A stretch of DNA of 64,000 nt from Obrimoposthia wandeli (taxonomy: Eukaryota), in contig CDROCS010006375.1 in NCBI GenBank assembly GCA_977020255.1, positions 1 through 64,000 on the forward strand, in the 5' to 3' direction. Every line of letters starts with the position of its first letter. Position 1 is the first letter of the stretch. Of this stretch, positions 39,069 to 64,000 are shown piece after piece. Under the pieces are notes generated by a model. That model was not told the DNA's origin, did no database searches, and saw nothing but the letters and a program-made list of their open reading frames with translations. The translations under genes were made by a program, and so were the position numbers.

Positions 39069-39076
39069 CCCTAGCG

Positions 39077-44876: not shown

Positions 44877-44977
44877 GTTAAACTCCTAATCGCTATTCCG
44901 TTACACGGACTTATGATTTTATCCCCAGCTTATCTCACTATATAATTTCAGTTTTAAAATATACAGTGGTGGATGGC

Positions 44978-48953: not shown

Positions 48954-48954
48954 T

Positions 48955-49986
48955 ATGGATCACTTTTATCAACTGAGCCCAGCTAAACAGGCGGAAAAAC
49001 TACAGCTCCTCGCCAGCGTGGCCCTTGCTAACTGGAATATCCAACCCTCTAACATAACGCTGATCAAGTACCGTGAGAACGCTGTATTCAAAGTGGAGAC
49101 AGGCAGTGACAAATTTGCCCTGCGTATTCATCGCCCAGGTTATCACAGCAATCTCGCCCTTCAGTCTGAGCTAGCGTGGATAGCGGCACTAGAGGAAGCA
49201 GGTATACCAGTACCTGCAGTTATAGCCACCTGTGAGCATAAACTCTGTATCAGTGTGCAGGTTGAAGGTGTACCTGAAGCACGTGATGTCGACCTGTTTG
49301 CTTGGGTGGAAGGAGAGACACTCGGTAGTGTGGAAAGTGGTGTCGCACAAGATACTCAAGAGCTTTGCGCTACTTATGCTTACATTGGTGAACTCGCCGC
49401 GAAGCTACACAACCAATCAAGTACTTGGGACTTGCCAAAAAATTTCCAACGCCACGCTTGGGATTGTGATGCTCTGGTGGGTGATCAGCCGTTTTGGGGG
49501 CCTTTTTGGCAATTACCTGAATTAACTAAGCAACAGCGATCATTGCTCTTAAGCGCGCGAGCGCAAGTTCAAAAAAATCTCTGCACTCTGGAAAAGACAG
49601 CACGTAATTACAGCATGATACATGCGGATTTTGTTCCTGAAAACCTAATGAAAGAAGGGGATAACATTCGCCTCATTGATTTTGATGACGCAGGTTTTGG
49701 CTGGCACATGTTCGAGCTTGCCACCGCATTGTATTTCATCACTCAAGACACCCATTATGTCGCTGTAAAAGAGGCGCTCTTTGCTGGCTATCGTAAACAT
49801 CGGCCACTACCAGAGACGGACATTACATTGCTCGATACTTTTTTAGCGGCCAGAGGGTTCAGTTATTTAGGTTGGATTATGGATCGAGGCGAGACCGAAA
49901 CGGCACAACAAATGAGCCAATCACTGATCGACTTAGCCTGTTATCACGCCAAGCGTTTACTCGAAAAAAAACAGGATCAAGCATGA
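48955..49986 (+). CDS. APH/choline-kinase-fold phosphotransferase (hydroxylysine/homoserine kinase II-like)
   Basis: RENAVF, ALRIHRPG, HADFVPEN, LIDFDD. Confidence 0.85.
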   Translation: MDHFYQLSPAKQAEKLQLLASVALANWNIQPSNITLIKYRENAVFKVETGSDKFALRIHRPGYHSNLALQSELAWIAALEEAGIPVPAVIATCEHKLCISVQVEGVPEARDVDLFAWVEGETLGSVESGVAQDTQELCATYAYIGELAAKLHNQSSTWDLPKNFQRHAWDCDALVGDQPFWGPFWQLPELTKQQRSLLLSARAQVQKNLCTLEKTARNYSMIHADFVPENLMKEGDNIRLIDFDDAGFGWHMFELATALYFITQDTHYVAVKEALFAGYRKHRPLPETDITLLDTFLAARGFSYLGWIMDRGETETAQQMSQSLIDLACYHAKRLLEKKQDQA

Positions 49987-51483: not shown

Positions 51484-52320
51484 TCAATAAGACATAAACA
51501 CGGTCATTTTGGTCTTGTTAAAAATACGGTTGGATAGCGATGTAGAGTGACGTCTTCTAAACTTACTGTGCTCATAAGCACCCATGACTAACAAGGTGGG
51601 CTCTACACTGTTTAAGTAGTCGATCATCAACGTCTCTACATTCTCTCCTTTCTTTGCTTTGAGAATGACCGTTTGAGTATTGATACCGTGACGCTGCAAG
51701 ATATCTTCGAGATTGATACCCGTTAGTTGGTGGCTACTTTTACCTATATCCACGGTTAAAATTGTCACTAACTTCTTAGTCTCTAAGATGTTCATTGCAT
51801 CTGATAATGCTCTTGCCGCAGCACGACGGCCATCCCAGGCGATAATCGCGTGATCGTTAAAGTTCTCTACGGCATGGTCTTTAGGGATGACCAGTACGGG
51901 TCTACCACTACTGAGAGCTATTTTGTCTGGGTCTAAATCAAGATGGTCTGGATTGTTGATAACATCCCTGCGGCCAATCACGGTAATATCAAACAAGCTA
52001 GAGTAATCGGCAACCGCGGTATCTGGATCTCCACGTTCCGCAATCCAGTGTAACTTGTCCTCATCAACGACCGCCGCTGTCGCTGCGTAAAACTGCCTTT
52101 GGAGTTTTGCACGCTCTTCTTCTTCCAGCGCTGCTATCGCGCTAAATACAGCTTTGGGCATCCACGATTGAGCATTTTTTCCCGCGGGTGTGAGGTTACA
52201 TTGAGTTAAAATTCCCGTCAGATGCGCTTGATACTTTTGCTGCATCAACATCCCAGCTTTTAACGCCGCCTGAGAAGATTCTGTACCATTGAAAGTCACT
52301 AATATATTCTTAATACTCAT
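51484..52320 (-). CDS. Tandem-domain universal stress protein
   Basis: IKNILV, SGRPVLVIP, IIAWDG...ARAL, LLVMGAYEHS. Confidence 0.88.
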   Translation of the reverse strand: MSIKNILVTFNGTESSQAALKAGMLMQQKYQAHLTGILTQCNLTPAGKNAQSWMPKAVFSAIAALEEEERAKLQRQFYAATAAVVDEDKLHWIAERGDPDTAVADYSSLFDITVIGRRDVINNPDHLDLDPDKIALSSGRPVLVIPKDHAVENFNDHAIIAWDGRRAAARALSDAMNILETKKLVTILTVDIGKSSHQLTGINLEDILQRHGINTQTVILKAKKGENVETLMIDYLNSVEPTLLVMGAYEHSKFRRRHSTSLSNRIFNKTKMTVFMSY

Positions 52321-52341
52321 GATCTTACCTCTTCTAACTAT

Positions 52342-53583
52342 TCACACTATTCCTTTGACAACGATTCCGTCGGCTACCCATTGATCAAAAATTGTTAGCG
52401 CTAACTCGCTGAAGGGAGCATCGTTAATATGGGCATCTAAGTCACTGACCTGCACGTTGCTACTCAGCTGTGCGGCGATTTCATCTAGGAACACTTCTAA
52501 TGCCTCTGGGGCGTGTAAATCTGCGCCAGGTCTATCCCACTCTTCGATCCCTTGTCGCGGTAAAATAACATGTACAGGCGCAGTCGCGGCGTTTAAGCGT
52601 TTGGCGATCTCAACCGCACTTTCGCGACGTTGCTGAGCATCTAACACGACAGAACCTAACAGACGATTGTGAGCATGATAGTGGTCTGGGTTGAACTTTG
52701 ACGGTAGCGGCTGCCACTCGGGAAGATCAACCAAGTCCATGCAGCCGGGTGCCCATAACTGCGGTATCCCCTGTGCACCTGCGTTTAGCATTCGCGATTC
52801 ACCGGCATTAATCGCGGAACCGTGCACCCAGTTCCCCAGCTCTTGAGGGGCAAAATCCATCACCGCCGCGAAAGCACCCTGCTCCGCCAGCGATTCGAAT
52901 GCTCTGCCGCCCATACCTGTGGCATGAAAGACGGCTACCTCGTAACCACGCGCTTCGAGGGCGGGCTTAAGCGTCACCATATATTTTAAACAAGACTTAC
53001 CAAGCGATGTCATACCAATCAGCGGTTTACTGTTTTGCGGCGGCTCGACTGCTCGACACGCACCCACCACAGCACCACCGGCCTGACTAAGCGATGACTT
53101 GCAAATCGAGTTCAAACCATACAAGCCACCAGCCCAAAGAATCATTTGGGTATCTGCTGCGAGACGATCTGCACCGATTAGAGGAGAGAATGCGACTGTC
53201 GATATAATGTATTTCGGAACGCCCATTGGTAGCGCTGTAGCGACATCTAATGCAAGATCAGTCCCCATGGTGCCGCCCATCGAAATAAAACCATCAAACT
53301 TCTTTTCTCGATACAATTGCGTGGTCAGTGCGACAGCGCCTTTTGCCATCAATTGCATCGCCGAATTTTCATCACCGGATGCAATCACTTCTTCGATAGT
53401 CACGCCCGCCGCATGAGCCACATCCTGCTTGGTATAATCCAGTGTGCTACTAGTGCGTCCCAACACACTAATGTCCATCAAAACAACGTTCGCCTGCTGG
53501 CTTTGGATACGCTCGGCTAAATAGTTAAGCTCATCGGTTTTAGTATCAAAAGTACCGACAATCAATATAGTGACATCTCTCAT
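52342..53583 (-). CDS. Tm-1-like ATP-binding domain protein (UPF0261)
   Basis: VGTFDTK.DEL, GGTMGT, LPMGVPK, VFHATGMGG. Confidence 0.88.
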   Translation of the reverse strand: MRDVTILIVGTFDTKTDELNYLAERIQSQQANVVLMDISVLGRTSSTLDYTKQDVAHAAGVTIEEVIASGDENSAMQLMAKGAVALTTQLYREKKFDGFISMGGTMGTDLALDVATALPMGVPKYIISTVAFSPLIGADRLAADTQMILWAGGLYGLNSICKSSLSQAGGAVVGACRAVEPPQNSKPLIGMTSLGKSCLKYMVTLKPALEARGYEVAVFHATGMGGRAFESLAEQGAFAAVMDFAPQELGNWVHGSAINAGESRMLNAGAQGIPQLWAPGCMDLVDLPEWQPLPSKFNPDHYHAHNRLLGSVVLDAQQRRESAVEIAKRLNAATAPVHVILPRQGIEEWDRPGADLHAPEALEVFLDEIAAQLSSNVQVSDLDAHINDAPFSELALTIFDQWVADGIVVKGIV

Positions 53584-53599
53584 TCTTCGCTCCTACTCG

Positions 53600-55096
53600 T
53601 TACAACTGTATCCAGGCGGTTTTTAGATCTATGTACTTATCCAGCGCATGCAGTGACTTATCGACACCATTACCTGACTGCTTATGCCCTCCAAGCGGTA
53701 CAGTGCTATCTGCACCACCGTATGTGTTGACATGAACAACCCCAGCTTTAACAGCTTTTATCATACGGTGTGCTCGTGAGAGGTTGTCTGTCCAGATAGC
53801 CGCAGCCAAGCCAAACTCAGTGCTATTGGCTATTTCTATCGCCTCTTGTTCTGTGTCGAAGGGAATAACCGCCAATATAGGACCAAATGCTTCAGTGTGA
53901 GCAATATCCATATCGGGAGTCACTCGATCAAAAATCGTCGGTTGCATATAGCTGCCTCCAGATTCAAGATGTAGCTGCTGCCCCCCCGTGACCAAATCAG
54001 CTCCCTGTTGAATTGCGGTCTCGACAAACTTTAAGTTGCGCGCTAACTGTGCACTGTTAGCGACACAACCTATCTGCTGGGTTAGATCAAGCGGATCACC
54101 AATTTTCAGCCCTTGGGCAACTGTTTTTAGTTTTTCGACAAACGCTTGATGGATCGATCGTTCAACCAGTATTTTAGAACCGGCGATACAAACCTGTCCC
54201 GAATTTCTAAAAATCCCCATCGCAGACACCTGCGCCGCTTTATCTAAATCAGCGGCATCGGCAAAGATAATATTCGGTGACTTGCCACCGAGTTCTAAAT
54301 AAACTTTCTTTAAATTAGAATCCGCGGCGCTATGTAACAGCTGACGGCCTATACCACCGGACCCTGTAAAAGCGAGCACATCGATATCCATATGCTTAGC
54401 CATCGCATCGCCGGCTTCATGGCCGTAGCCTGTGACGACATTAAGCACGCCATCTGGAAGGCCTGCCTCAGATGCTAGCTGTGCTAAGCGCAGCACCGAT
54501 AGGGAGGCGTGTTCAGAAGGCTTGAGGATAACCGAGTTACCCGCAGCCAATGCCGGTGCTATTTTCCAACTGGCGATCATTAAAGGAAAATTCCAAGGCA
54601 CTATTGCGGCAACTACGCCGACCGGCTCACGATGAATGAGCCCTAATACATTATCTTGGGTGGGGGCTATTTCGCCGTAAACTTTATCGATAGCCTCTGC
54701 GTAATAGCGGAACGTTCCCGCAGCGCTGCCGGGTTCACCTTTTAGCGCCATCGCTAATTCTGTGCCGTTATCACGCACGCCCAATACAGCTAGCTCTAAG
54801 GTATGCTCTTCAATTAATGTCGCTAATTTTAGAAGTATCGTTTTGCGCTGCTGAGGGCTTTGTTTTGCCCAAATACCGCTGTCGTAGCTTTGTCGAGCGG
54901 CAGCAACGGCTAGATCGACATCTACTATTGTTGCTCTAGCAATACTACTGATACGGCGGCCATCTATTGGGCTAATGACGTCGATAGACTCCCCTGATTT
55001 TGCCGTTACTTGCTGACCGTTTATCAATAATGACTGCGCGGGTATAACCTGCTGGCGTAATTGATCTACTTGTTGTTGCTGCATTGCTAACCTCAT
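53600..55096 (-). CDS. Aldehyde dehydrogenase (PuuC-like), copy 1
   Basis: VPWNFP, LELGGKSP, NSGQVC; signature LAVLGVRDNGT. Confidence 0.9.
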   Translation of the reverse strand: MRLAMQQQQVDQLRQQVIPAQSLLINGQQVTAKSGESIDVISPIDGRRISSIARATIVDVDLAVAAARQSYDSGIWAKQSPQQRKTILLKLATLIEEHTLELAVLGVRDNGTELAMALKGEPGSAAGTFRYYAEAIDKVYGEIAPTQDNVLGLIHREPVGVVAAIVPWNFPLMIASWKIAPALAAGNSVILKPSEHASLSVLRLAQLASEAGLPDGVLNVVTGYGHEAGDAMAKHMDIDVLAFTGSGGIGRQLLHSAADSNLKKVYLELGGKSPNIIFADAADLDKAAQVSAMGIFRNSGQVCIAGSKILVERSIHQAFVEKLKTVAQGLKIGDPLDLTQQIGCVANSAQLARNLKFVETAIQQGADLVTGGQQLHLESGGSYMQPTIFDRVTPDMDIAHTEAFGPILAVIPFDTEQEAIEIANSTEFGLAAAIWTDNLSRAHRMIKAVKAGVVHVNTYGGADSTVPLGGHKQSGNGVDKSLHALDKYIDLKTAWIQL

Positions 55097-55264
55097 ATTT
55101 AAAATCTAATAAATGGAGTGACCGCTGCAGCTTAGTGAGAGGTTTGTCGAGTTCGCCGCTACAGATCAAAGAGCCTGCCTCAAATCGTATTCTTCTCGCT
55201 ACGATTGGCTAATTCCGACAACCTTCTAGTTATAAACTAAGGCTGCGTATCTAATATACTTTTG

Positions 55265-56752
55265 TTAACTAGTCGCTACGGCCCTCGCTCTTTTACGCCA
55301 CAGCGAAATAAAGTGGAGCACGATAGACCCAACTATTAACGCAAAAAGCACGGCGGCAACAGGTCTATTGATAAAGTCATAGAACGTATCTACCCGGGGC
55401 AAGCTTGTTCTCAATTTCACTTCCATAATGCCACCTAGCACCATGCCTAGGATGATGGGAACTATCGGTAACTCTAAGCGTTTAAGAATAAAACCAAACA
55501 CCCCGAAAACAGCTGCCATCACACAGTCAGTAAAAGAGTTACGCAGTGAGTAAACACCGACAAAGGATAGAATTAGAATCAACATCCCAAGAAATCGATT
55601 AGGGATAAGCACCACCTTAAGTAGCCACTTACTTGTTCCCATCAAAAAGACTAACGCCAACACATTGAGCGCCAGTAAACACAGATACAAAGCGAGGATA
55701 AAATCGGGCTGATTAATAAATAGCTGTGGTCCCGGCACCACGTTGTGTACATAAAAAACTGAGAGCATCATCGCTGTTAGTGCCTCTCCCGGAATACCTA
55801 AAGCCAGCAGCGGAATAAGCGCAGCAGCAGGCACTGCGTTGTTTGCCGCCTCTGAAGCCACTAAACCTTCAGGGGATCCCCTACCAAATTCATCGGGGTT
55901 CTTTGATATTTTCTGAGCAAAGTTATAGGAAAAAAACTGCGCTAAAAATTCACCGACACCTGGAATAATGCCCATGAACACACCAAAACCCGACGAGGGG
56001 ATAAAGACTTTTGGCATCTTAAATACTTCTTTTAGGCCCTCAAACAAGCCGCCTTTTAGCTCAGGTTCTACCACTTGATCATCCCCTTTCATCAGCAAAA
56101 CAAATGCCTGACTCAAAGCAAACAATCCTAGAACAACCACAATCAAGTTAATTCCTGAAGACAGCCAAGTCTGATCGAAGGTAAAACGTTTAGTGTACTG
56201 AATGGGCTCTAGCCCTATCGTGTTAAGGAAGATACCAAGGCACAATAAAAACCCGGCGATCATGTGTTGACCACTGTGCGAGATAACGACCAGCACCATA
56301 CCCAAAATACAGGCGAGGAAAATTTCTCGTGATCCAAACATCGGTGCCACTTTAGCCAGCAGTGGTGATAGCGCTATCAAAGCAATGACAGATATGATGC
56401 CACCTAAAAATGAAGCGCCGTAAGACAGCGCTAATGCTCTAGCAGCCTCACCGCGACATGTCATTGGATAACCATCGTAAGTCGTTAATGCATTAACTGG
56501 CGTACCTGGGGTGTTACAGAGGATTGCCGGTATTGCGCCACCAAACATAGCAGAACCGTATATCCCTAATAACAAGGTCAAACCAACAATAGGCTCCATA
56601 GCAAAAGTAGCGGGTAAGAGGATGGCGATCGCTATCGCAGGCCCCACGCCTGGTATCGCGCCAATGACGACACCGCCAAAAGACCCCATTAATAGTGCCA
56701 GTAAAACGTCAACCCGATAGAGCAGTTCTAAACTGGAAAGCAAAGTATCCAT
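55265..56752 (-). CDS. tctA: Tripartite tricarboxylate transporter large subunit
   Basis: GAIPGVG, IPAIL.NTPGTP, EAANNA, LGIPG. Confidence 0.9.
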   Translation of the reverse strand: MDTLLSSLELLYRVDVLLALLMGSFGGVVIGAIPGVGPAIAIAILLPATFAMEPIVGLTLLLGIYGSAMFGGAIPAILCNTPGTPVNALTTYDGYPMTCRGEAARALALSYGASFLGGIISVIALIALSPLLAKVAPMFGSREIFLACILGMVLVVISHSGQHMIAGFLLCLGIFLNTIGLEPIQYTKRFTFDQTWLSSGINLIVVVLGLFALSQAFVLLMKGDDQVVEPELKGGLFEGLKEVFKMPKVFIPSSGFGVFMGIIPGVGEFLAQFFSYNFAQKISKNPDEFGRGSPEGLVASEAANNAVPAAALIPLLALGIPGEALTAMMLSVFYVHNVVPGPQLFINQPDFILALYLCLLALNVLALVFLMGTSKWLLKVVLIPNRFLGMLILILSFVGVYSLRNSFTDCVMAAVFGVFGFILKRLELPIVPIILGMVLGGIMEVKLRTSLPRVDTFYDFINRPVAAVLFALIVGSIVLHFISLWRKRARAVATS

Positions 56753-56789
56753 AAGCGTCTCTGTTATATTTATTTTATGCTATTTATTT

Positions 56790-57371
56790 TTAAAGCTTTA
56801 AAATCATAAAGTTGCGAATATACTCGGGCAAATGGTTATACAATTCTCCACCGGGGATTTTTACCTCAAGTAGCGATTTGAATAACACCACTATGGCGAT
56901 ACTCAATAAACATGCCGCCCAGTAGATGTTTTTTTGCCGATAACCCAAACGCCATGTTAATACGACGCTAAAGAGTACTGTGCTCGGTAGATAACCCAGC
57001 TCTGGCACCAACCAAACGTAAGCTAAAAACCACAGTGGGTATTCAACAACCACCAGCCACGCTGTGAGTTCCTTTAACAGCTGCTCTCTTTGTGTTTTAT
57101 CACGTTGTAGCCAGCTGCTAATCAGGAAGCAACTGGCAAAAAAACCCATACCGGCAAGAGATATAGCAGACCAAAAACCCGGTTGCGAAACAAAGGGTTT
57201 ATTAGAGGGGAATTTCGCCTGAGTTGATATATTAGACAGCAACCAAAATGAGAACAGTGCTAAGAGCAACGCAAACACCCACTGTGCAGGATGATGATGC
57301 TGCTCTATCAACTGCTGGATTTTGCGCGGTTCACTCTGTACTTTATTAGAAGTATTTGGGTTGCTGCTCAT
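56790..57371 (-). CDS. tctB: Tripartite tricarboxylate transporter small subunit
   Basis: Four TM segments, QPGFW, LGYLPST, LFKSLL..KIPGG; directly upstream of tctA. Confidence 0.8.
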   Translation of the reverse strand: MSSNPNTSNKVQSEPRKIQQLIEQHHHPAQWVFALLLALFSFWLLSNISTQAKFPSNKPFVSQPGFWSAISLAGMGFFASCFLISSWLQRDKTQREQLLKELTAWLVVVEYPLWFLAYVWLVPELGYLPSTVLFSVVLTWRLGYRQKNIYWAACLLSIAIVVLFKSLLEVKIPGGELYNHLPEYIRNFMILKL

Positions 57372-57381
57372 TGCTGTCTCC

Positions 57382-58731
57382 TTAGACTGTAGCCAAGCCC
57401 GCATCTAGCGCGGCGATGATTTTCTCGACATCTGCTGTCGTGATGATAAGTGGCGGCGATAGAATAATAATATTGCCTGAAATACGTAGCATTACCCCTG
57501 CTTCGTAGGTCCCCTCATTCACCGCAGCCATTACCTCTTTTGCCGCCGGCTTTTTACTCTCGCGGTCACTCACCAACTCTAGCGAGCACATCAAACCAAT
57601 ACCGCGTACGTCGCCAATAACAGAATACTTTTGCTTGAGCTTTTCTAACCCTGCTTTGAGCTCTATTCCTCTTGCCGCTGCATTATCCTTAACATTTAAA
57701 CGCTTAGTTTCGCGCAACGCTGCTAGTGCAGCTGCACAGCCTACCGGGTGTCCTGAATAAGTGTAACCGTGCCCAATATCGCCAAAGCTATCTTTGTTAG
57801 ACTCGAATGCTTGGGCAATTTTATCGTTGATTAACGCTGCACCAAACGGAAAATAGGCGTTGCTAATACCTTTGGCGGTGGCCATCATATCTGGCTTCAC
57901 ACCCCACAGGCGCGAACCACTCCATTCGCCCGTTCTACCAAACGCAGTAATCACTTCATCGGCAATAAGCAAGATGCCATGTTTGTCGCAAATTTCACGA
58001 ACCCTAGGCATGAAGCTTTCATGAGGGACAATAACACCGCCAGCACCGAGTACCGGTTCCATGATAAATGCGGCAATGGTATCGGCACTCTGGAAACCTA
58101 TTTCTTCTTCAAGCATTTTGATACAGGCATCAGCCACTTGCTTAGCGTCATCTAACTGGAAAGGGTTGCGATAGACCCAAGGCGCGGCAATATGAAAGAC
58201 GCCCGGCATTAATGGTTCGTAATTACGACGAAACTTAGCGTTACCATTAACGGAAGCTCCGCCAAAGTGAGTACCGTGGTAACCCTTTTTCAAGGCGATG
58301 AATTTGGTGCGGTCTCGATCACCTTTCAATTTGTGATACTGGCGCGCCAAACGCAGGCATGTCTCGACAGAGTCGGAGCCGCCCGAGGTAAAGAAAGAGC
58401 GAGTCATGCCATCTTCTTTGAACCATTCGATCAATTCGGCTGATAATTCCACTAGTGGAGCCGTTGTAGTGCCGCGAAAAGATGAATAATAAGGCAGCAC
58501 TTCTAATTGGTGAGTGATGGCATCTTTGATTGGCTGGCAAGAGTAACCCAAGTTGGCATTCCATAAACCACCCACCGAATCCAGCACGGTATTACCATCG
58601 ATGTCTGTTATTTCTACACCTTGGGCCGAAACGATGACTTTGGGCGGGTTTGCGAGCATGTCCGCTGGATGCGCCATGGCGTGCCAAAAATTCTTTGCGT
58701 TATTCTCTTTGATGAAAGCTTTATTTTCCAT
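57382..58731 (-). CDS. Class III (omega-amine) aminotransferase
   Basis: GGLWN, GYHGTH, EPVLGAGG, DEVITAFGRTG, ATAKG, HGYTYSGHP. Confidence 0.9.
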   Translation of the reverse strand: MENKAFIKENNAKNFWHAMAHPADMLANPPKVIVSAQGVEITDIDGNTVLDSVGGLWNANLGYSCQPIKDAITHQLEVLPYYSSFRGTTTAPLVELSAELIEWFKEDGMTRSFFTSGGSDSVETCLRLARQYHKLKGDRDRTKFIALKKGYHGTHFGGASVNGNAKFRRNYEPLMPGVFHIAAPWVYRNPFQLDDAKQVADACIKMLEEEIGFQSADTIAAFIMEPVLGAGGVIVPHESFMPRVREICDKHGILLIADEVITAFGRTGEWSGSRLWGVKPDMMATAKGISNAYFPFGAALINDKIAQAFESNKDSFGDIGHGYTYSGHPVGCAAALAALRETKRLNVKDNAAARGIELKAGLEKLKQKYSVIGDVRGIGLMCSLELVSDRESKKPAAKEVMAAVNEGTYEAGVMLRISGNIIILSPPLIITTADVEKIIAALDAGLATV

Positions 58732-58776
58732 GACATCCTCTTTTAAATAGGGCTTTCGCAGCTACTTAGCCACGTT

Positions 58777-59424
58777 TTATTGTTTGATTTTATCTGCTAT
58801 ATCCGCGTAACTTTTTGTCGGTTCCAGCACGTCGAACCACTGTGTCTGCATGCCGATCGCGATAGCACCATCGATATTGCGCTGTTGATCGTCAATAAAT
58901 AGGCACTGCTCAGGAGCCAAATCGAGTCCTTGAAGTACCTGTTGATAGGCGCGGGCATCGGGCTTTAGTATTTCGGTATAGGTGGCGTCCACCACTAGTT
59001 CAAAATCGTCCATAAAAGTCAGCTTTTGACGAAGGTCTGCGCCGTAAAACAAATCCAACTCATTGGATAGAATAGCCAGACGTAGACCCTGTTTTTTTGC
59101 CTGTTCAATGCAGTTTAAAAATTCTGGGCGAATAATTTCCAAAGGATGACTGCCGCGCGCCTGTTGGACAAAAGCGTTCATGCTATCCCAGTGCAAACCG
59201 AGTAACTCGCCTGTTTCACGGGCACGATGTAGCCAGTAATCACGTTCGGTAATTTCATCTGCCTGCATTTTTCGCCAAACATCATCCAACTCTGGCTCAA
59301 ACGGACCCCGCCACTGCAGCGTTCCAGGGGTCAGTCCTAATTCTTTTTCGGTGAGCGGATGTGTTTCAAACATTGTTTTTGAAATAACGCCTCCAAAATC
59401 AAAAACTAATGCGGCAATGCTCAT
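58777..59424 (-). CDS. HAD-superfamily hydrolase, copy 1
   Basis: FDFGGV, ILSN, KPD...Y, FIDD...N. Confidence 0.85.
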   Translation of the reverse strand: MSIAALVFDFGGVISKTMFETHPLTEKELGLTPGTLQWRGPFEPELDDVWRKMQADEITERDYWLHRARETGELLGLHWDSMNAFVQQARGSHPLEIIRPEFLNCIEQAKKQGLRLAILSNELDLFYGADLRQKLTFMDDFELVVDATYTEILKPDARAYQQVLQGLDLAPEQCLFIDDQQRNIDGAIAIGMQTQWFDVLEPTKSYADIADKIKQ

Positions 59425-60212
59425 AGCATTCTCCGCTTGTTTTTGGTGAGAAAGGCATCACTGAGAGTACCTCCAAGCGCTTTGGTAACGTCAACGGCAG
59501 CTTGAATGACCAAGGTGGCAATCTCATCTTCGCGCTCACTATTCATACGCGAAGCCGGGCTGGCCACTGCAACAGCACCTATCGGTGTTCCTGTCGCATC
59601 AAAGAAAGGTGCCGCAATACCATAAACTTCACTCTCATAAGTTTGATTGGAAACGGCGTAGCCTTTTAGCCGTGTTTCCAAGAGCTCAATTTTTAGTGCC
59701 TCCAGACTATCGACAGTTTCACTGGTGTATTTTTCCAGTTCATCAACCATTAACTCCTCAAAGCGATCTTTACTCGAAAAAGCCAAATAGGACAGCCCGG
59801 ATGCTGTCGCGTGAATAGGCAGCGGCTCATCGTCTTGTAAATGAACCCGAATGACTCGCGTTGACGCAGAGATACCAATGGACATCATATTGGTGTCGAT
59901 ACCGGCAGAGAGTGAGGCGTGTGCCGTTTCTTCTGTGGATTGAGTGAGCTGGTGTAATATCGGTTCAACAATACTGACCATCGGCGAATTGGTCTCGCGG
60001 ATTCTCGCCAGCTGTAAAAAGCCAATTCCCAAGCGATAATCGCGTGTTTCTAAATTTTGTTCGATAAACGCGTGTTTTTGTAATGCAACAAGTAAGCGTC
60101 GCGTGCCAGCCTTATCTATCTTTGCCATACGCGACAACTCGGACAGTCCTATTTCCGGTCTCTGGGTACTAAACAGCCCAAGAAGTTTCATCGCCTTATC
60201 TACAGTTTGCAT
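59421..60212 (-). CDS. IclR-family regulator
   Basis: TVDKAMKLL..F, LPIHATASG, YGIAAP, GAVAVA. Confidence 0.9.
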   Translation of the reverse strand: MQTVDKAMKLLGLFSTQRPEIGLSELSRMAKIDKAGTRRLLVALQKHAFIEQNLETRDYRLGIGFLQLARIRETNSPMVSIVEPILHQLTQSTEETAHASLSAGIDTNMMSIGISASTRVIRVHLQDDEPLPIHATASGLSYLAFSSKDRFEELMVDELEKYTSETVDSLEALKIELLETRLKGYAVSNQTYESEVYGIAAPFFDATGTPIGAVAVASPASRMNSEREDEIATLVIQAAVDVTKALGGTLSDAFLTKNKRRML

Positions 60213-60396
60213 TTTTTCTCCACGCTAAACCTTTCTATCGCTGATGCTGAATCGCCGCAATAACCGACCGATTCCGCTTTAGAATTATGTTGACAGCTAA
60301 AAAAAGAAAATGCAATAATTATTTGAACCACTGGTTCTAATAATGAACCGATAAGTTAATTAATCACCTACACACGATAATATTGAGGGATAGACA

Positions 60397-61341
60397 ATGA
60401 AAAAAATAAATACCTTAGTCTCAGCCGTGATTGCCTCGAGCTGTCTAATGATGGGCACAGCCCAGGCCGAGTATCCAAACAAACCAGTATCGATCGTTGT
60501 GCCTTTCCCGCCGGGTGATTTAGAAGATGTGACCAGTCGTATGATTGCCAATACGTTTCAAGATATGTACAAAGTACCTGCTGCGGTCATCAATAAGCCA
60601 GGTGGCGGCGGTGGCCCTTTTCCGGGCGCCGTTAGTGTTGCGCAGGCGAAACCAGACGGCTACACCATAGGTTCCTTCGTTATAGGCGTGCCGTTAGTCG
60701 GCCCTAAAATAGGTATTCCCGAGCTGACTCCTGACCCTTTTGAGCCTATCGGAATTTATCTAACCTACCCCTTTGTCATTGTCGCCTCTAAAAATGCGCC
60801 GTATCAAACACTGGAAGAGATGGCGGAACACGCCAAGAGCAACAAACTAATATTGGGTCATTTTGGTGCGCCGCTGATACCTTCAAAAGTGACAATCGCT
60901 CTAGCCAAAAAAATGGATTTCAATTGGGCTTCTGAAGCGGGCTTTGACGCTCTAGATTGCAATACGTTAGCGTCAGGTGATGTCGATGTCATGAACACGA
61001 CACTACAGCTTGTACTACCTTGTTTGGACAAGGTTAATATTTTAGCAACTGTCACAGAAGAGCGAATCAGTACCATCCCTGAGGTTCGTACCGTAGGTGA
61101 GCTTTTCCCTGACTTAAAAATTGGTTTGTGGAACGGTATCTTTGTTCATAAAGACACCCCACAAGAAGCGCGGACTAAAATTGCAGCGGCAGTAAAAAAG
61201 ACTGTGTTAAGTAACCAAGCACAAGACCTATCCGCTAAAACAGGTGCTTCGATTTATTGGAAGGACACTGCGCAAGCCAATCAACAGATAGACACCGATA
61301 AAAAAACATTTGCTAGCTTGCAGGTACTTTTAAACGATTGA
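60397..61341 (+). CDS. tctC: Tripartite tricarboxylate transporter substrate-binding protein (Bug/TctC)
   Basis: YPNKPVSIVVPFPPG, NKPGGGG, KPDGYT. Confidence 0.9.
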   Translation: MKKINTLVSAVIASSCLMMGTAQAEYPNKPVSIVVPFPPGDLEDVTSRMIANTFQDMYKVPAAVINKPGGGGGPFPGAVSVAQAKPDGYTIGSFVIGVPLVGPKIGIPELTPDPFEPIGIYLTYPFVIVASKNAPYQTLEEMAEHAKSNKLILGHFGAPLIPSKVTIALAKKMDFNWASEAGFDALDCNTLASGDVDVMNTTLQLVLPCLDKVNILATVTEERISTIPEVRTVGELFPDLKIGLWNGIFVHKDTPQEARTKIAAAVKKTVLSNQAQDLSAKTGASIYWKDTAQANQQIDTDKKTFASLQVLLND

Positions 61342-61375
61342 TCTAACTTGATCATTCACTGCTAAATTATCAACT

Positions 61376-61403
61376 GGCGCAAGTGACCTTGCGCCGTTTT
61401 TTT
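61376..61403 (+). terminator. Rho-independent terminator after tctC
   Basis: GGCGCAAG-TGAC-CTTGCGCC then GTTTTTTT. Confidence 0.8.
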
Positions 61404-61417
61404 GCTGTGACTTTTAC

Positions 61418-62914
61418 TTAGTTTGGGTCGAGCGATATCCATGCTGTTTTCAAATTAATGTACTTATCAAAAGCATGTAGCGAGCGGTCCACTCCATTGC
61501 CTGATTGCTTTACTCCACCCAATGGCACCGTTTGATCGGCACCGCTAAAGCAATTGACCTGTACTACTCCTGCCTTAATTGCCTTAACCATTTTATGTGC
61601 AGTGGCCAAGTTGGAGGTCCAGACCACAGAGGACAGCCCATATATCGTGCTGTTGGCGATCTCAATCGCCTGTTCCATGGTATCGAAACTTAAAATAGAG
61701 AGCACTGGGCCAAAGACTTCTTCTTGAGCGAGCGACATTTGGCTAGTCACCTCACTAAACACGGTCGGCGCGTAGTAGCTGCCACCACTTTCGGACAGCA
61801 GCTTTTTCCCGCCTAGTAATAAATTTGCGCCCTCGGCAATACCCTGCTGCACCTTAGCCTCTATCACCTTCAACTGCGCAGCGTTAGCGATAGCACCCGT
61901 AGTTGATTGCAACTCTAAGGGGTCGCCAATGTGTAACGCTCTGGCATGATCCAGTATTTTTTCGATCAACAACTCCTTCACACTGTGATGCACAATGACT
62001 CTTGATGCGGCGACACACACTTGCCCTGAATTCCTAAAAATTGACGCGGCAGTCTCTTTCGCTACCCGGTCCAAATTAGCGGCGTCGGCAAAAATAATGT
62101 TAGCCGACTTACCACCTAACTCTAAATAGACCCGTTTCATATTGGACTGTGCCGCGTACTCCATCAGGCGTCTACCGACACCCCCTGAACCGGTAAAAGC
62201 TAACACGTCAACATCCATATGTAGACCCAGCGCTTGTCCGCTCTTTTGGCCAAGGCCTGTCACTACATTTAAGACGCCAGATGGAAGTCCCGCTTGAGCA
62301 GCTAACTCTGCGATTTTTAGTAGCGTTAATGAGGCACTTTCGGAAGGTTTTAATACAACACAATTACCTGCCGCTAACGCCGGCCCCAGCTTCCAGGCGC
62401 CTATCATCAGTGGGAAATTCCAAGGTACGATCAAACCAACCACACCAACGGGTTCTCGATGAATCAGACCTAACACCTGATCACTACTCGGTGCTATCTC
62501 GCCATATAGTTTATCCGCTGCTTCTGCGTAATAGCGAATAGTCGCCGCTGCACTCAAGGGTTCCCCTTTTAGGGCCGTTTTAATATCAGTTCCGTTATCG
62601 CGCACCCCAAGCACCGCTATCTCTAGTGCGTGTTGCTCGATCAAATCTGCCCACTTACGCATCACTTTTGCGCGAAACGCAGGGCCTGCATTGGCCCATT
62701 CACCATGGGCAAAAGCGCTTCGCGCTGCCCTTACCGCGTGATCAACATCTACGTCATTAGAATCAACGATGGAAGTAAACACTTTCCCATCGATGGGGCT
62801 CTCAACGTCTAAACGTTGTTCATCTACCCCAGCTAAATGCTGGTTATTGATGAAATTCATTGCCGGCGCCACCTGTTGCTCTCGCAGAGTGTCAATCTCA
62901 CTTTGATCTAACAT
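61418..62914 (-). CDS. Aldehyde dehydrogenase (PuuC-like), copy 2
   Basis: Near-identical signature IAVLGVRDNGT..ALKGEP; LELGGKS, NSGQVC. Confidence 0.9.
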   Translation of the reverse strand: MLDQSEIDTLREQQVAPAMNFINNQHLAGVDEQRLDVESPIDGKVFTSIVDSNDVDVDHAVRAARSAFAHGEWANAGPAFRAKVMRKWADLIEQHALEIAVLGVRDNGTDIKTALKGEPLSAAATIRYYAEAADKLYGEIAPSSDQVLGLIHREPVGVVGLIVPWNFPLMIGAWKLGPALAAGNCVVLKPSESASLTLLKIAELAAQAGLPSGVLNVVTGLGQKSGQALGLHMDVDVLAFTGSGGVGRRLMEYAAQSNMKRVYLELGGKSANIIFADAANLDRVAKETAASIFRNSGQVCVAASRVIVHHSVKELLIEKILDHARALHIGDPLELQSTTGAIANAAQLKVIEAKVQQGIAEGANLLLGGKKLLSESGGSYYAPTVFSEVTSQMSLAQEEVFGPVLSILSFDTMEQAIEIANSTIYGLSSVVWTSNLATAHKMVKAIKAGVVQVNCFSGADQTVPLGGVKQSGNGVDRSLHAFDKYINLKTAWISLDPN

Positions 62915-62929
62915 TTTGCTACCCCTAAA

Positions 62930-63607
62930 TTATTGACCTAAACCTAACAGCCTTCTGGCATCTGCTATGCAGCGTCGAGGTTTAAAAACATCCAACTGTA
63001 AACCGTGCATGCCCACAGCATCCGCTCCCTGTGCGTTGATCAATTGGTCATCGATAAATACGCACTCTTGTGGCGCTAGCTGTAACTCATCCAGACACAG
63101 CTGGTATGCCTGAGGGTCAGGTTTTAGGATATGGGTATAAGTCGCATCGACGATCACATCGACAACGTCAAGGAAAGGTAGCTTTTCACGGATATCAGCA
63201 CCAAAAAACAAATCGAGCTCATTGGAGAGTATCGCCACTTTACGACCGGCATGGTGCGCTTCATACATTAGTTCAATCATTTCTAAACGCATGATAGACA
63301 TAGGATTCTGGCCACGGGCACGCTTGACGAAATCAACCATAGTGGTCCAGGTTTCTCCCACCAGCTCCCCCACTTCTTTTGTTCTGACTAACCAGTAATC
63401 ACGTTGACTAATCAACCCCGCTTCCATATCGCGCCACAACGGATCATTGGCGGGATCAAAGGGGCCCATCCACGTCAATGTATTGGGTTTAAGACCAAGC
63501 TCTCGCTCGGTTTGGGCATGCGTTTCAAACATGGTTAACGAAATGACGCTACCAAAATCAAGCACCAGTGCTTTTGCACTAGTTGGCTCCGCTGTAAGTT
63601 TACTCAT
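62930..63607 (-). CDS. HAD-superfamily hydrolase, copy 2
   Basis: LDFGSV, ILSNELDLF, KPDP.AY, FIDD; ATGA-coupled to the upstream ORF. Confidence 0.85.
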   Translation of the reverse strand: MSKLTAEPTSAKALVLDFGSVISLTMFETHAQTERELGLKPNTLTWMGPFDPANDPLWRDMEAGLISQRDYWLVRTKEVGELVGETWTTMVDFVKRARGQNPMSIMRLEMIELMYEAHHAGRKVAILSNELDLFFGADIREKLPFLDVVDVIVDATYTHILKPDPQAYQLCLDELQLAPQECVFIDDQLINAQGADAVGMHGLQLDVFKPRRCIADARRLLGLGQ

Positions 63608-64000
63608 GTCATGTGATACCAATTGTTAATCATTTGATCGATCTCTGCTGATCGGTAACGCGCCTCTAGGCGAGCAAAGACGTCGTTAACTTGAGCTGTA
63701 CTGGCACTAATTTCTGAAGTAATTACGTCTAAATCATAAACAGAACCGACTGTCGGCAAAACTTCATCGATATGTAACGTTTTACTGTGACGATGCTGCA
63801 GCAAATGTTGATAGGCACCACGATAAAGTGCAGGGTCGTAATCGTCGTTATCACCTTCGGGCTCGATACCCAGTGATAGCGCTAACACTTTAATTTGTTG
63901 CCACATAAAATCGACCACCGCAGGTGGCGCATCCGCCGCTTCTCTTTGATGTTTAGGCTGAGCAATACTTTGAGCGCGACAAGCTACAATATGTTGACGC
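63604..64000 (-). CDS. C-terminal part of an unidentified protein, 5'-truncated by the window edge
   Basis: Frame is open from 63999 to the stop at 63604; its stop overlaps the HAD start (ATGA), so it is probably real and co-translated. Confidence 0.7.
   Translation of the reverse strand, partial: RQHIVACRAQSIAQPKHQREAADAPPAVVDFMWQQIKVLALSLGIEPEGDNDDYDPALYRGAYQHLLQHRHSKTLHIDEVLPTVGSVYDLDVITSEISASTAQVNDVFARLEARYRSAEIDQMINNWYHMT

What the first reader, a model, noticed from the sequence alone, without database searches (positions are those of the whole stretch)
51484..64000. Uncharacterised catabolic cluster: IclR, split TTT transporter, omega-aminotransferase, HADs, ALDHs, Tm-1-like protein and USP
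Seen: tctC is divergent while tctB/tctA sit inside the operon iclR-HAD-aminotransferase-tctB-tctA-ALDH-Tm1-USP; a second unit (unknown ORF-HAD-ALDH) enters from the right. Established: UPF0261/Tm-1-like proteins have no known bacterial function, and TTT systems usually import carboxylates. Inference: a complete pathway (import, dephosphorylation or hydrolysis, transamination, oxidation) for an unknown nitrogenous acid, which could reveal the function of Tm-1-like proteins. I recognise no described pathway with this content.
Basis: partly seen in the sequence, partly recalled or inferred. Interest (0 to 1): 0.72.

Follow-up and report, generated by a model that had tools for sequence, protein, structure and literature searches.

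The report
Phenolic-amine breakdown operon with Tm-1-like kinase
A marine bacterium's widely conserved gene cluster most likely turns tyramine- or dopamine-type compounds into hydroxyphenylacetic acids for ring cleavage, and it contains a relative of the only Tm-1-like protein with a known activity (a phenol kinase), whose role in this pathway nobody has described.

Summary
The minus-strand operon is iclR, HAD, class-III omega-aminotransferase, tctB, tctA, ALDH, UPF0261, tandem USP, with a divergent tctC. A second unit enters from the right.

The core (aminotransferase, IclR, TctCBA, ALDH, UPF0261) recurs with 58-74% identical orthologues in about 50 of 80 fetched loci. These come from Rhodobacteraceae, Rhizobiaceae, Granulosicoccaceae, Thiothrix and Oceanospirillaceae.

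The interpretation needs revision in two places.
- UPF0261 is no longer functionless. MarK (JBC 2025, PDB 9MPY) is an ATP-dependent phenol kinase, and the window protein keeps its ATP lysine and phenol-binding His/Gly.
- The context points to aromatic substrates. The window carries a complete homoprotocatechuate meta-cleavage set at 31.7-40.6 kb. Sixteen loci place a MarR gene right after UPF0261, most followed by hpa genes. One operon continues into p-hydroxyphenylacetate 3-hydroxylase and HpaD. Sinorhizobium fredii has the homogentisate route alongside.

My reading is arylethylamine to arylacetaldehyde to hydroxyphenylacetate. An organic anion is imported (TTT, replaced by TRAP in one locus). 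Transient phenol phosphorylation by UPF0261 and removal by HAD would follow the acetovanillone Hpe/Acv precedent. The imported ligand and the kinase substrate remain inferred.

I rate this a new variant of a known kind, of moderate to high interest.

The parts
59421..60212 (-). IclR-family regulator, first gene of the operon
   Evidence: PF09339 and PF01614. Orthologues at 34-50% identity lie next to the aminotransferase in about 46 loci.
60290..60344 (+). tctC promoter-like site (TTGACA-18-AATAAT, TG-extended) overlapped by a 27-bp palindrome (ATTATTTGAACCA T TGGTTCTAATAAT); candidate IclR operator
   Evidence: These are consensus and repeat scans only. Function is inferred.
58777..59424 (-). 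HAD-IA hydrolase (HAD1), motif I DFGGV (Asp+2 = Gly); proposed phosphatase for aryl phosphate esters
   Evidence: PF00702/PF13419; TIGR01509 above its cut-off; sequence; 55% identical to HAD2. Present in about 17 of 80 loci.
57382..58731 (-). class-III omega-amine:pyruvate-type aminotransferase
   Evidence: PF00202; NF005683, 732 bits against 575. The best solved relatives are omega-transaminases 6S54 and 5LH9. Orthologues at 59-72% identity occur in 49 loci.
56790..57404 (-). TctB small membrane subunit of the TTT transporter
   Evidence: PF07331
55265..56752 (-). TctA large membrane subunit of the TTT transporter
   Evidence: PF01970, 434 bits
53600..55096 (-). NAD(P)-dependent aldehyde dehydrogenase (ALDH1), proposed arylacetaldehyde dehydrogenase
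   Evidence: PF00171. The best solved relatives are KauB 6B4R and the Pseudomonas syringae entries 5IUU/5IUV/5IUW. I recall the latter as indole-3-acetaldehyde dehydrogenase AldA; that name comes from my own knowledge. Orthologues lie directly before UPF0261 in 62 loci.
52342..53583 (-). UPF0261 / Tm-1-like ATP-binding protein, proposed MarK-like phenol kinase
   Evidence: PF06792 and PF23189; NF002676 above its cut-off. Full-length match to MarK 9MPY (E 4e-47) and to Tm-1. K15, G195, H220 and H305 are invariant in 75 orthologues.
51484..52320 (-). tandem universal stress protein, last gene of the operon; found only in the closest relatives
   Evidence: PF00582, 35 bits, two stretches. The same gene follows UPF0261 on the P0001 contig. 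It is absent from the other 80 loci.
60397..61341 (+). TctC periplasmic binding protein, divergent; terminator-like hairpin at 61375-61396
   Evidence: PF03401. Only distant solved relatives, 92 bits or less. Terminator scan.
61418..62914 (-). ALDH2, paralogue of ALDH1 (60% identity), last gene of the second unit
62930..63622 (-). HAD2, paralogue of HAD1 (55% identity), motif I DFGSV
63604..64000 (-). C-terminal part of a 285-aa P-loop protein (Walker A GLSGVGKS) that starts at contig position 64461. Upstream of it, outside the window, lie a thiamine-diphosphate decarboxylase, a HisC-like aminotransferase and a MarR regulator.
   Evidence: AlphaFold2 model with pLDDT 92.5, and only weak matches to P-loop kinase-like folds. 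The six-gene unit is conserved on contigs C688 and C1143.
31687..40555 (.). Context: homoprotocatechuate meta-cleavage cluster (MarR, HpaD_Fe, CHMI, HpaE, HpaG, HpaI, HpaH, succinate-semialdehyde dehydrogenase), the proposed sink for the operon's product
   Evidence: TIGR02298 508 bits against 316; TIGR02299 817 against 638; TIGR01780 691 against 646. tblastn against the Pelagimonas hpa genes. MarR.
47637..51395 (+). Context: phospho-lyase-like class-III enzyme, APH-family kinase and ALDH3. The same first two genes lie inside or beside the UPF0261 operon in about 12 other loci.
44097..46588 (.). Context: an IclR-like regulator and a PehA-like Cys-type sulfatase/phosphoesterase, apparently cytoplasmic. 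Orthologues lie after UPF0261 in L071 and L015.
   Evidence: The cytoplasmic location rests on my reading of the N-terminus only; no signal-peptide predictor was run.

Best explanation
The operon is one funnel of a catabolic island (window about 31.7 kb to contig 67.7 kb) that converts hydroxyphenyl-ethylamine-type compounds into (di)hydroxyphenylacetate. That product is then degraded by the homoprotocatechuate meta-cleavage genes in the same window.

Proposed steps:
1. TctC/TctBA imports an organic anion. The most likely ligands are a hydroxyphenylacetate, an aromatic amino acid such as L-DOPA or tyrosine, or a sulfate- or phosphate-conjugated amine.
2. The class-III aminotransferase converts the primary arylethylamine (tyramine or dopamine type) to the arylacetaldehyde.
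3. ALDH1 oxidises the aldehyde to the arylacetate.
4. UPF0261 acts as a MarK-like ATP-dependent kinase on a phenolic hydroxyl of a pathway intermediate. The HAD (in other genomes an RNase-Z-like MBL hydrolase or a PehA-like esterase) removes the phosphate later. This is the phosphorylate-transform-dephosphorylate logic shown for acetovanillone (HpeHI or MarK, then HpeCBA, then the HAD phosphatase HpeD).
5. IclR represses from the palindrome over the tctC promoter. The USP is a lineage-specific accessory, perhaps modulating the transporter.

Shown: gene content, conservation, homology to MarK, and linkage to hpa and homogentisate genes.

Inferred: substrate identity, which intermediate is phosphorylated, the TTT ligand, and the roles of HAD, USP and IclR.
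For: Conservation:
- The core of aminotransferase, IclR, TctCBA, ALDH and UPF0261 recurs in about 50 of 80 loci across alpha- and gammaproteobacteria.

Aromatic sink:
- The window carries HpaD_Fe, HpaE, CHMI, HpaG, HpaH, HpaI and SSADH.
- In 16 loci UPF0261 is followed by a MarR gene. Most of these continue into hpa genes (11 loci have HpaG), and six include an aromatic-amino-acid-decarboxylase-like gene.
- In L001 the genes after UPF0261 are p-hydroxyphenylacetate 3-hydroxylase oxygenase (NF045920, 747 bits against 650) and HpaD_Fe (453 against 316).
- In S. fredii the homogentisate genes follow.
- In 151 sampled genomes, 17 of 20 with HpaD also have the UPF0261 orthologue, against 47 of 151 overall (odds ratio 19, p 1e-7, uncorrected for phylogeny).
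- UPF0261 orthologues at about 60% identity in other contexts sit beside a PobA-like hydroxylase, a BphC-like dioxygenase, an Amidohydro_2 protein and a CoA ligase.

Kinase:
- The window protein matches MarK 9MPY over its full length (E 4e-47). The ATP lysine (K15), the phenol ligands (G195, H220) and the stacking histidine (H305) are invariant.

Precedent for a kinase paired with a HAD phosphatase:
- PMC9618137.

Hydrolases:
- HAD, an RNase-Z-like MBL hydrolase or a PehA-like esterase is present in many loci.

ALDH1:
- Its close solved relatives include the P. syringae entry 5IUU, which I recall as indole-3-acetaldehyde dehydrogenase AldA (the name is from my own knowledge).

Organic-anion import:
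- TTT in most loci, with a TRAP DctPQM transporter in the same position in L071.
Against: - No experiment links any gene of this clade to a substrate.
- TTT and TRAP systems take up anions, whereas tyramine and dopamine are cations, so the imported ligand does not follow simply from the enzymes.
- Three of seven MarK pocket positions differ: T196 to K/S/T, I285 to an invariant Asp, H348 to an invariant Trp. No Acv/Hpe-type carboxylase is nearby. The kinase substrate is therefore not acetovanillone-like and may not be a phenol.
- HAD is absent from most loci. HAD2 sits in a unit without UPF0261.
- The aminotransferase's nearest solved relatives are, from my own knowledge of those entries, enzymes acting on aliphatic omega-amino acids and diamines. 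ALDH1 is nearest to KauB and PuuC.
- In the window, hpa lies 12 kb away and is not adjacent. Many hpa-adjacent loci are related Rhodobacteraceae and so are not independent events.
- Some loci link UPF0261 to N-demethylases, a Rieske oxygenase or MttB. These also fit aliphatic methylated amines.
Confidence: 0.5

Rival explanations
1. Aliphatic omega-amino-acid or hydroxy-amino-acid catabolism. Candidates are GABA, 5-aminovalerate, 6-aminohexanoate, 4-amino-3-hydroxybutyrate from carnitine-type betaines, and hydroxylysine. TTT imports the amino acid. The aminotransferase and ALDH make a dicarboxylate. UPF0261 phosphorylates an aliphatic hydroxyl or has an accessory role. Proximity to hpa would reflect only shared succinate-semialdehyde and pyruvate metabolism.
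For: - TTT or TRAP import implies a carboxylate.
- The aminotransferase's closest solved relatives are omega-transaminases that, from my own knowledge, act on omega-amino acids and diamines.
- ALDH1 is closest to KauB and PuuC.
- N-demethylases (DAO-GCV_T, OYE/TMADH-like, MttB, Rieske) occur in about 15-20 loci, as in betaine catabolism.
- An amino-alcohol kinase and phospho-lyase module is linked to the cluster.
Against: - It does not explain the operon fusion with p-hydroxyphenylacetate 3-hydroxylase and HpaD in L001.
- It does not explain the MarR and hpa operon adjacency, which includes an aromatic decarboxylase.
- It does not explain the homogentisate genes in S. fredii.
- It does not explain the aromatic neighbours of orthologues in other contexts.
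- ALDH1 is not SSADH-like (376 bits against 591 for PuuC), and the hpa cluster has its own SSADH.
Confidence: 0.2
2. Conjugated biogenic amines. The imported anion is an O-sulfated (or O-phosphorylated) phenolic amine such as tyramine or dopamine O-sulfate from an animal or algal host. It is transaminated and oxidised as the ester, then deconjugated in the cytoplasm by the PehA-like sulfatase or the HAD. UPF0261 would have a salvage or regulatory role.
For: - A Cys-type PehA-like sulfatase/phosphoesterase, apparently cytoplasmic, with its own IclR-like regulator lies between the hpa genes and the amine modules in the window.
- Orthologues at 52-61% identity lie beside UPF0261 in L071, L015 and L033.
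- An anion transporter fits a sulfate ester. The contig comes from a 1.35-Gb host assembly, so the bacterium is probably host-associated.
Against: - The sulfatase is present in only a few loci.
- Nothing shows that it acts on aryl sulfates.
- This reading gives no reason for a conserved kinase.
Confidence: 0.12
3. Aminophosphonate catabolism. 2-Aminoethylphosphonate or its N-methyl derivatives are imported and transaminated to phosphonoacetaldehyde. The HAD then cleaves this as a phosphonatase, or the ALDH oxidises it.
For: - HAD motif I lacks the second Asp, as phosphonatase does (the phosphonatase motif is from my own knowledge).
- The aminotransferase gives weak hits to the PbfA family.
- N-demethylases occur in some loci.
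- The substrate would be anionic, and aminophosphonates are abundant in marine invertebrates (own knowledge).
Against: - The HADs give no hit to a phosphonatase model among 23 NCBIfam matches.
- HAD is missing from most loci.
- ALDH1 scores 290 bits against a cut-off of 636 for PhnY.
- There is no link to phn genes, and the aromatic context is left unexplained.
Confidence: 0.05

Closest known systems
MarK (Saro_1862) of Novosphingobium aromaticivorans, the UPF0261 aromatic kinase, PDB 9MPY (PMC12624787)
   Same: - Same two-domain UPF0261 architecture, with a full-length alignment at E 4e-47.
- The ATP-contact Lys, the phenol-binding Gly and His, and the stacking His are conserved.
- Both are encoded in a catabolic operon that also holds a HAD-superfamily hydrolase.
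   Different: - It belongs to a different subfamily (NF002676).
- Pocket positions T196, I285 and H348 are replaced: K/S/T at 196, an invariant Asp at 286 and an invariant Trp at 349.
- There is no AcvCDE/HpeCBA carboxylase.
- The partners are an aminotransferase, an ALDH and a TTT transporter. The HAD is type IA rather than NagD-like.
Hpe/Acv pathway for hydroxyphenylethanones (HpeHI kinase, HpeCBA carboxylase, HpeD phosphatase; PMC9618137)
   Same: It provides the logic proposed here: phosphorylate a phenol, transform the side chain, then dephosphorylate with a HAD enzyme.
   Different: Here the side-chain chemistry is transamination and aldehyde oxidation, not carboxylation. No step has been demonstrated.
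Tyramine/dopamine catabolon feeding homoprotocatechuate (Pseudomonas putida U tyn and hpa genes; E. coli tynA-feaB-hpa). This comparison rests on my own knowledge; I did not read the papers here.
   Same: An arylethylamine is converted to the arylacetaldehyde, then to (di)hydroxyphenylacetate, and then enters HpaD-type meta-cleavage. The amine-funnel genes are clustered with the hpa genes.
   Different: An omega-aminotransferase replaces the amine oxidase. The cluster adds a TTT or TRAP anion transporter, a UPF0261 kinase, a HAD or MBL hydrolase, optional N-demethylases and an amino-alcohol kinase and phospho-lyase module.
Tomato Tm-1 (PDB 3WRY, 3WRX)
   Same: The UPF0261 fold and the ATP-binding N-terminal domain (E 3e-45).
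   Different: Tm-1 carries a C-terminal TIM-barrel domain and acts by binding a viral replicase. The window protein has no PF09370 partner, either fused or adjacent.
AruH-AruI-KauB arginine transaminase route of Pseudomonas aeruginosa (own knowledge), as an analogue for the second unit
   Same: An aminotransferase, an acetolactate-synthase-like 2-oxoacid decarboxylase and a KauB-like ALDH act in series.
   Different: The aminotransferase is HisC-like. The decarboxylase belongs to family PRK08266, not to the AruI equivalog (376 bits against a cut-off of 500). The unit adds a P-loop protein and a HAD.

Membership tests
UPF0261 / MarK-type ATP-dependent aromatic kinase | PF06792 N-terminal and PF23189 C-terminal domains over the full length | tested here: met
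   156 and 208 bits; NF002676, 591 bits against 556
UPF0261 / MarK-type ATP-dependent aromatic kinase | Lysine contacting the ATP phosphate (MarK K16, Tm-1 K20) | tested here: met
   K15 aligns with MarK K16 and is invariant in 75 orthologues
UPF0261 / MarK-type ATP-dependent aromatic kinase | Phenol-oxygen ligands Gly195 and His219, and stacking His304 | tested here: met
   G195, H220 and H305 align with them and are invariant
UPF0261 / MarK-type ATP-dependent aromatic kinase | Ketone ligand His348 and hydrophobic wall Thr196/Phe283/Ile285 | tested here: not met
   W349, K196 (K/S/T across the clade), L284 and D286 occupy these positions
UPF0261 / MarK-type ATP-dependent aromatic kinase | Operon with the AcvCDE/HpeCBA biotin carboxylase | tested here: not met
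   No such gene was recognised among the recurrent neighbour families that I annotated in 82 loci. Several recurrent families were left unannotated.
UPF0261 / MarK-type ATP-dependent aromatic kinase | ATP-dependent phosphorylation of a phenolic hydroxyl, producing ADP | not testable with these tools
   Needs an enzyme assay
Tripartite tricarboxylate transporter (TTT) | TctA, TctB and TctC components all encoded | tested here: met
   PF01970, PF07331 and PF03401. tctC is divergent here but contiguous with tctBA in other loci.
Class-III omega-amine:pyruvate aminotransferase | PF00202 fold and membership of a curated subfamily | tested here: met
   323 bits; NF005683, 732 against 575; 6S54 at E 5e-134. 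The amino acceptor and substrate were not tested.
HAD phosphatase | Motif I DxDx(T/V) with a nucleophile Asp and a general-acid Asp+2 | tested here: not met
   HAD1 reads DFGGV and HAD2 reads DFGSV. The nucleophile Asp is present, and Asp+2 is Gly. From my own knowledge, E. coli YihX (glucose-1-phosphatase) has the same variant, so phosphatase activity on good leaving groups remains possible.
Homoprotocatechuate (hpa) meta-cleavage pathway in the same window | HpaD, HpaE, CHMI, HpaG, HpaH and HpaI present | tested here: met
   TIGR02298 and TIGR02299 above their cut-offs. tblastn hits for the other genes.
Homoprotocatechuate (hpa) meta-cleavage pathway in the same window | 4-hydroxyphenylacetate 3-hydroxylase (HpaB type) | tested here: not met
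   No PF03241 match in the whole assembly. The alternative C2-type oxygenase of L001 gave no tblastn hit in the window contig stretches or in the C688 and C1143 fragments that I searched; it was not sought in the rest of the assembly.
Phosphonatase (PhnX) route for aminoethylphosphonate | HAD matching the phosphonoacetaldehyde hydrolase model; a PhnY-type ALDH | tested here: not met
   No phosphonatase model among the 23 NCBIfam hits of HAD1. PhnY model 290 bits against 636.
Universal stress protein, ATP-binding class | Usp domain with the G-2x-G-9x-G(S/T) nucleotide motif | tested here: inconclusive
   PF00582, 35 bits, two stretches. Reading the sequence by eye, I did not see the motif. No formal motif scan was run.

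The most novel reading that the evidence does not exclude
UPF0261 proteins of this clade are phenol kinases that put a temporary phosphate on tyramine- or dopamine-type amines, or on their hydroxyphenylacetate products.

Under this reading the reactive phenolic aldehydes are handled as anionic phosphate esters, which resemble the omega-amino acids that the aminotransferase's relatives prefer. The phosphate is removed afterwards by a HAD, an RNase-Z-like MBL hydrolase or a PehA-like esterase.

This would be a widespread 'phosphate protecting-group' strategy for catabolising biogenic amines in marine and rhizosphere bacteria. The neighbouring unit, with a new P-loop kinase-like family next to a paralogous HAD and ALDH, would be a second instance.
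Probability: 0.25. Interest if true: 0.8.

Novelty: new variant of a known kind. Interest (0 to 1): 0.6.

Why it matters
UPF0261/Tm-1-like proteins are found in all domains of life, yet only one has a demonstrated activity, and that was shown on an evolved E16K variant.

This clade is abundant. Its gene context is tight and informative, and it offers cultivable carriers for testing.

If the kinase acts on phenolic amines or hydroxyphenylacetates, three things would follow.
- A second native function for the family would be defined.
- It would show how marine and root-associated bacteria consume host and algal neuroactive amines such as tyramine, dopamine, octopamine and hordenine.
- Transient phosphorylation would extend from a lignin-monomer curiosity to a more general catabolic tactic.

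The cluster also supplies an uncharacterised TctC ligand class and an IclR sensor that could serve as a biosensor.

Tried and rejected
- Literature. Searches for UPF0261, PF06792, Tm-1-like, tyramine/dopamine catabolon and hordenine catabolism returned only the MarK paper as a functional assignment. Nothing describes this cluster.
- Wasted look-ups. Two encoding-contig queries used match coordinates rather than full ORFs and returned nothing.
- TctC against solved structures. Only distant relatives, 92 bits or less, so there is no ligand inference.
- Asp286 and Trp349 as amine-binding residues. Rejected as evidence, because both are invariant in orthologues that have no aminotransferase nearby.
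- Phosphonate reading. Considered because of the HAD motif and the decarboxylase in the second unit, and rejected on the family scores.
- Indolepyruvate or phenylpyruvate decarboxylase for the second unit's thiamine-diphosphate enzyme. Not supported: it belongs to PRK08266, and its nearest named relative is AruI-like.
- Foldseek on the 285-aa P-loop protein. Only weak matches to kinase-like P-loop folds (TM 0.56 or less), so its function stays open.
- Prior notes of this scan held nothing on UPF0261 or hpa.
- The large representative-protein search was not used, because no claim here rests on an absence of relatives.

Full report
**Observation**

On the minus strand lie iclR (59421-60212), a HAD-IA hydrolase (58777-59424), a class-III aminotransferase (57382-58731), tctB (56790-57404), tctA (55265-56752), an ALDH (53600-55096), a two-domain UPF0261 protein (52342-53583) and a weak tandem Usp protein (51484-52320). 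The aminotransferase scores 732 bits on NF005683 against a cut-off of 575. The UPF0261 protein scores 591 on NF002676 against 556. tctC (60397-61341) is divergent. Overlaps and short gaps argue for one transcript.

A near-consensus promoter for tctC (60290-60319) is overlapped by a 27-bp palindrome (60318-60344). This is a candidate IclR operator. It is inferred only.

The second unit contains ALDH2 (61418-62914) and HAD2 (62930-63622). These are paralogues of ALDH1 and HAD1, at 60% and 55% identity.

**Origin of the DNA**

The window is the first 64 kb of a 78.8-kb bacterial contig inside a 1.35-Gb assembly, presumably a host with associated bacteria. The nearest UPF0261 proteins, at 79-83% identity, come from Pseudomonadales MAGs and 'Osedax symbiont Rs2'.

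Extending to the right shows that the 'unknown ORF' is a 285-aa protein with a Walker A motif (GLSGVGKS). It is preceded by an acetolactate-synthase-like thiamine-diphosphate decarboxylase (PRK08266), a HisC-like aminotransferase and a MarR regulator. This six-gene unit recurs at 75-90% protein identity on two other contigs of the assembly without the first operon next to it. It is therefore a separate operon.

The P-loop protein belongs to a family of more than 600 'hypothetical proteins'. It models confidently (pLDDT 92.5). It gives only weak matches to kinase-like P-loop folds such as gluconokinase and adenylate kinase (atlas lead).

**Conservation**

A word-based search found thousands of UPF0261 relatives. 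The top 120 are 61-83% identical. Contigs of three of them show the same gene set.

A scan of species-representative genomes returned 80 loci with 10-kb flanks. I analysed these by tblastn with the window proteins and by unsupervised clustering of all ORFs. The families occur in the following numbers of loci:
- UPF0261: 74
- ALDH, directly upstream of UPF0261: 62
- TctA: 54
- the aminotransferase: 49
- IclR: 46
- TctC: 42
- TctB: 41

The usual layout is AT-(HAD)-IclR divergent from TctC-TctB-TctA-ALDH-UPF0261. One inversion of the AT-HAD-IclR-TctC block gives the window's 'split' transporter. HAD is present in about 17 loci. The USP occurs only in the closest relatives.

Recurrent accessories:
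- A DAO-FAO_M-GCV_T demethylase and an OYE/TMADH-like flavoprotein flank UPF0261 in about 15 loci.
- A second class-III enzyme with an APH-family kinase occurs in about 12 loci. This is the same pair that lies at 47.6-50.0 kb in the window, at 50% and 39% identity.
- A glutamine-synthetase-like enzyme with a P450 occurs in about 10 loci.
- An RNase-Z-like MBL hydrolase sits beside the aminotransferase in 9 loci that lack a HAD.
- A MarR gene directly follows UPF0261 in 16 loci.

**What is known about UPF0261**

MarK of Novosphingobium aromaticivorans is a UPF0261 protein that phosphorylates the phenolic hydroxyl of acetovanillone and related aldehydes and ketones. It uses ATP and produces ADP. 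The structure 9MPY shows substrate contacts at G195, T196, H219, F283, I285, H304 and H348, and an ATP-site Lys16 (PMC12624787).

The window protein aligns with MarK over its full length (E 4e-47) and with Tm-1. It retains K15, G195, H220 and H305, which are invariant in all 75 orthologues. At the other pocket positions it has K196 (K/S/T in the clade), L284, an invariant D286 and an invariant W349. It is thus a plausible kinase with a different substrate.

In the related Hpe pathway the phosphate is removed by HpeD, a HAD-superfamily enzyme, after the side chain has been transformed (PMC9618137).

**Evidence for an aromatic substrate**

1. The window itself has MarR, HpaD_Fe (508 bits against 316), CHMI, HpaE (817 against 638), HpaG, HpaI, HpaH and SSADH at 31.7-40.6 kb.
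2. In Pelagimonas varians and about ten other Rhodobacteraceae loci, MarR and then CHMI, HpaE, HpaD (LigB type and/or TIGR02295 type), SSADH, a PLP decarboxylase of the aromatic-amino-acid type, HpaG, HpaH and HpaI follow UPF0261 directly.
3. In metagenomic locus L001 the operon runs TctCBA, ALDH, UPF0261, p-hydroxyphenylacetate 3-hydroxylase oxygenase (NF045920, 747 against 650), HpaD_Fe (453 against 316). A matching flavin reductase is nearby.
4. In S. fredii the cluster is followed by hmgA, fumarylacetoacetase, an FAD hydroxylase with DUF2783, and a GST. This is a homogentisate route.
5. Orthologues at about 60% identity in quite different loci sit next to a PobA-like hydroxylase with a CoA-transferase, a BphC-like dioxygenase, an Amidohydro_2 decarboxylase-like protein or a CoA ligase.
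6. Among 151 sampled genomes of one Rhodobacterales family, 47 have the UPF0261 orthologue and 20 have HpaD_Fe. Seventeen have both (odds ratio 19, Fisher p 1e-7). This is not corrected for shared ancestry.
7. ALDH1's close solved relatives include the P. syringae entry 5IUU, which I recall as the indole-3-acetaldehyde dehydrogenase AldA, beside KauB.

**The transporter**

TTT is replaced by a TRAP DctPQM system in the same position in a Granulosicoccus locus. Both classes take up organic anions, so the imported compound is very probably anionic. This does not fit free tyramine or dopamine.

The candidates are hydroxyphenylacetates (compare HpaX in E. coli, from my own knowledge), aromatic amino acids that are decarboxylated inside the cell, and sulfate- or phosphate-conjugated amines.

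An apparently cytoplasmic Cys-type PehA-like sulfatase/phosphoesterase lies in the window at 44966-46588. Orthologues at 52-61% identity lie beside UPF0261 in three loci.

Two Rhizobiaceae loci have IclR, TctCBA and UPF0261 without the aminotransferase or ALDH, next to a Rieske oxygenase. This hints that the transported ligand may itself be the kinase substrate.

No HpaB-type hydroxylase was found in the assembly. This favours catechol-type inputs (dopamine or DOPA giving 3,4-dihydroxyphenylacetate) for the window organism, but a negative result in a mixed draft assembly is weak evidence.

**Most likely mechanism**

The operon converts arylethylamines to arylacetates and also takes up a related aromatic anion. 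The products enter the hpa pathway.

UPF0261 phosphorylates a phenolic hydroxyl of one intermediate, and a hydrolase (HAD here) removes the phosphate. The HADs' motif I (DFGGV, DFGSV) lacks the general-acid Asp. From my own knowledge, this variant is tolerated when the leaving group is good, as with an aryl or anomeric phosphate.

Neighbouring modules would deliver the same aldehyde hub:
- The amino-alcohol kinase and phospho-lyase pair would take beta-hydroxylated amines.
- The demethylases would take N-methylated amines.
- The second unit would take an amino acid via its 2-oxo acid.

I put about 0.85 on 'amine to aldehyde to acid catabolism with anion uptake'. I put about 0.65 on aromatic hydroxyphenylacetate products, and about 0.4 on phenol phosphorylation by UPF0261. 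Overall confidence in the combined statement is 0.5.

**Rivals and comparison with known systems**

The rivals are aliphatic omega- or hydroxy-amino acids, sulfated amines and aminophosphonates. They are weighed in the sections of this report.

The overall flow resembles the known tyramine/dopamine catabolon feeding homoprotocatechuate. The differences are the aminotransferase in place of an amine oxidase, the anion transporter, the UPF0261 kinase and the hydrolases. I found no description of this combination, so I class it as a new variant of a known kind.

Noticed in passing
window 31687-40555: A complete homoprotocatechuate meta-cleavage cluster: MarR, HpaD_Fe, an HbpS-like protein, CHMI, HpaE, two HpaG halves, HpaI, HpaH and SSADH. 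An AraC regulator (42162-43187) and a Mem_trans permease (40675-41628) lie beside it.
   Followed up: partly
window 44097-46588: An IclR-like regulator and a 540-aa Cys-type sulfatase with no obvious signal peptide. Its best NCBIfam model is the PehA phosphoric/sulfuric ester hydrolase, below the cut-off. Orthologues lie beside UPF0261 in Granulosicoccus and in two alphaproteobacterial loci.
   Followed up: partly
window 63604-64000 and contig G000:C6375 to 64461 (L085:2604-3461): A 285-aa protein with Walker A GLSGVGKS. It belongs to a family of more than 600 unannotated proteins found in Pseudomonadota, Chloroflexota and Deinococcota. The AlphaFold2 model is confident, but it finds only weak relatives with kinase-like P-loop folds. 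The gene overlaps HAD2 by 19 nt.
   Followed up: partly
G000:C688:3019-9355 and G000:C1143:259200-265000: Two further copies of the MarR, HisC-like aminotransferase, thiamine-diphosphate decarboxylase, P-loop protein, HAD, ALDH unit, at 75-90% protein identity. They lie on other bacterial contigs of the same 1.35-Gb assembly, so several related bacteria, or replicons, are present.
   Followed up: partly
loci L004, L006, L011, L016, L035, L039, L076, L077, L078, L083: A glutamine-synthetase-like enzyme (nearest models are type III GS and gamma-glutamylputrescine synthetase, both below cut-off) paired with a cytochrome P450 recurs beside the cluster. From my own knowledge, this recalls the gamma-glutamylation and P450 logic of isopropylamine catabolism.
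   Followed up: no
contig G000:C6375 68000-75700 (L085:7053-9969, L086:1841-5678): To the right of the second unit lie a SoxA-like GCV_T protein, a DAP-epimerase-fold protein, a DAO oxidoreductase, an AsnC regulator and an amino-acid ABC transporter. This is a separate amine or amino-acid module.
   Followed up: no
L028:14659-17265: In a Granulosicoccaceae MAG the TctCBA, UPF0261, OYE unit lies next to a LysR regulator, a non-pyrrolysine MttB-family methyltransferase and a GbdR-like AraC/DJ-1 regulator. This suggests a link to quaternary-amine demethylation.
   Followed up: no
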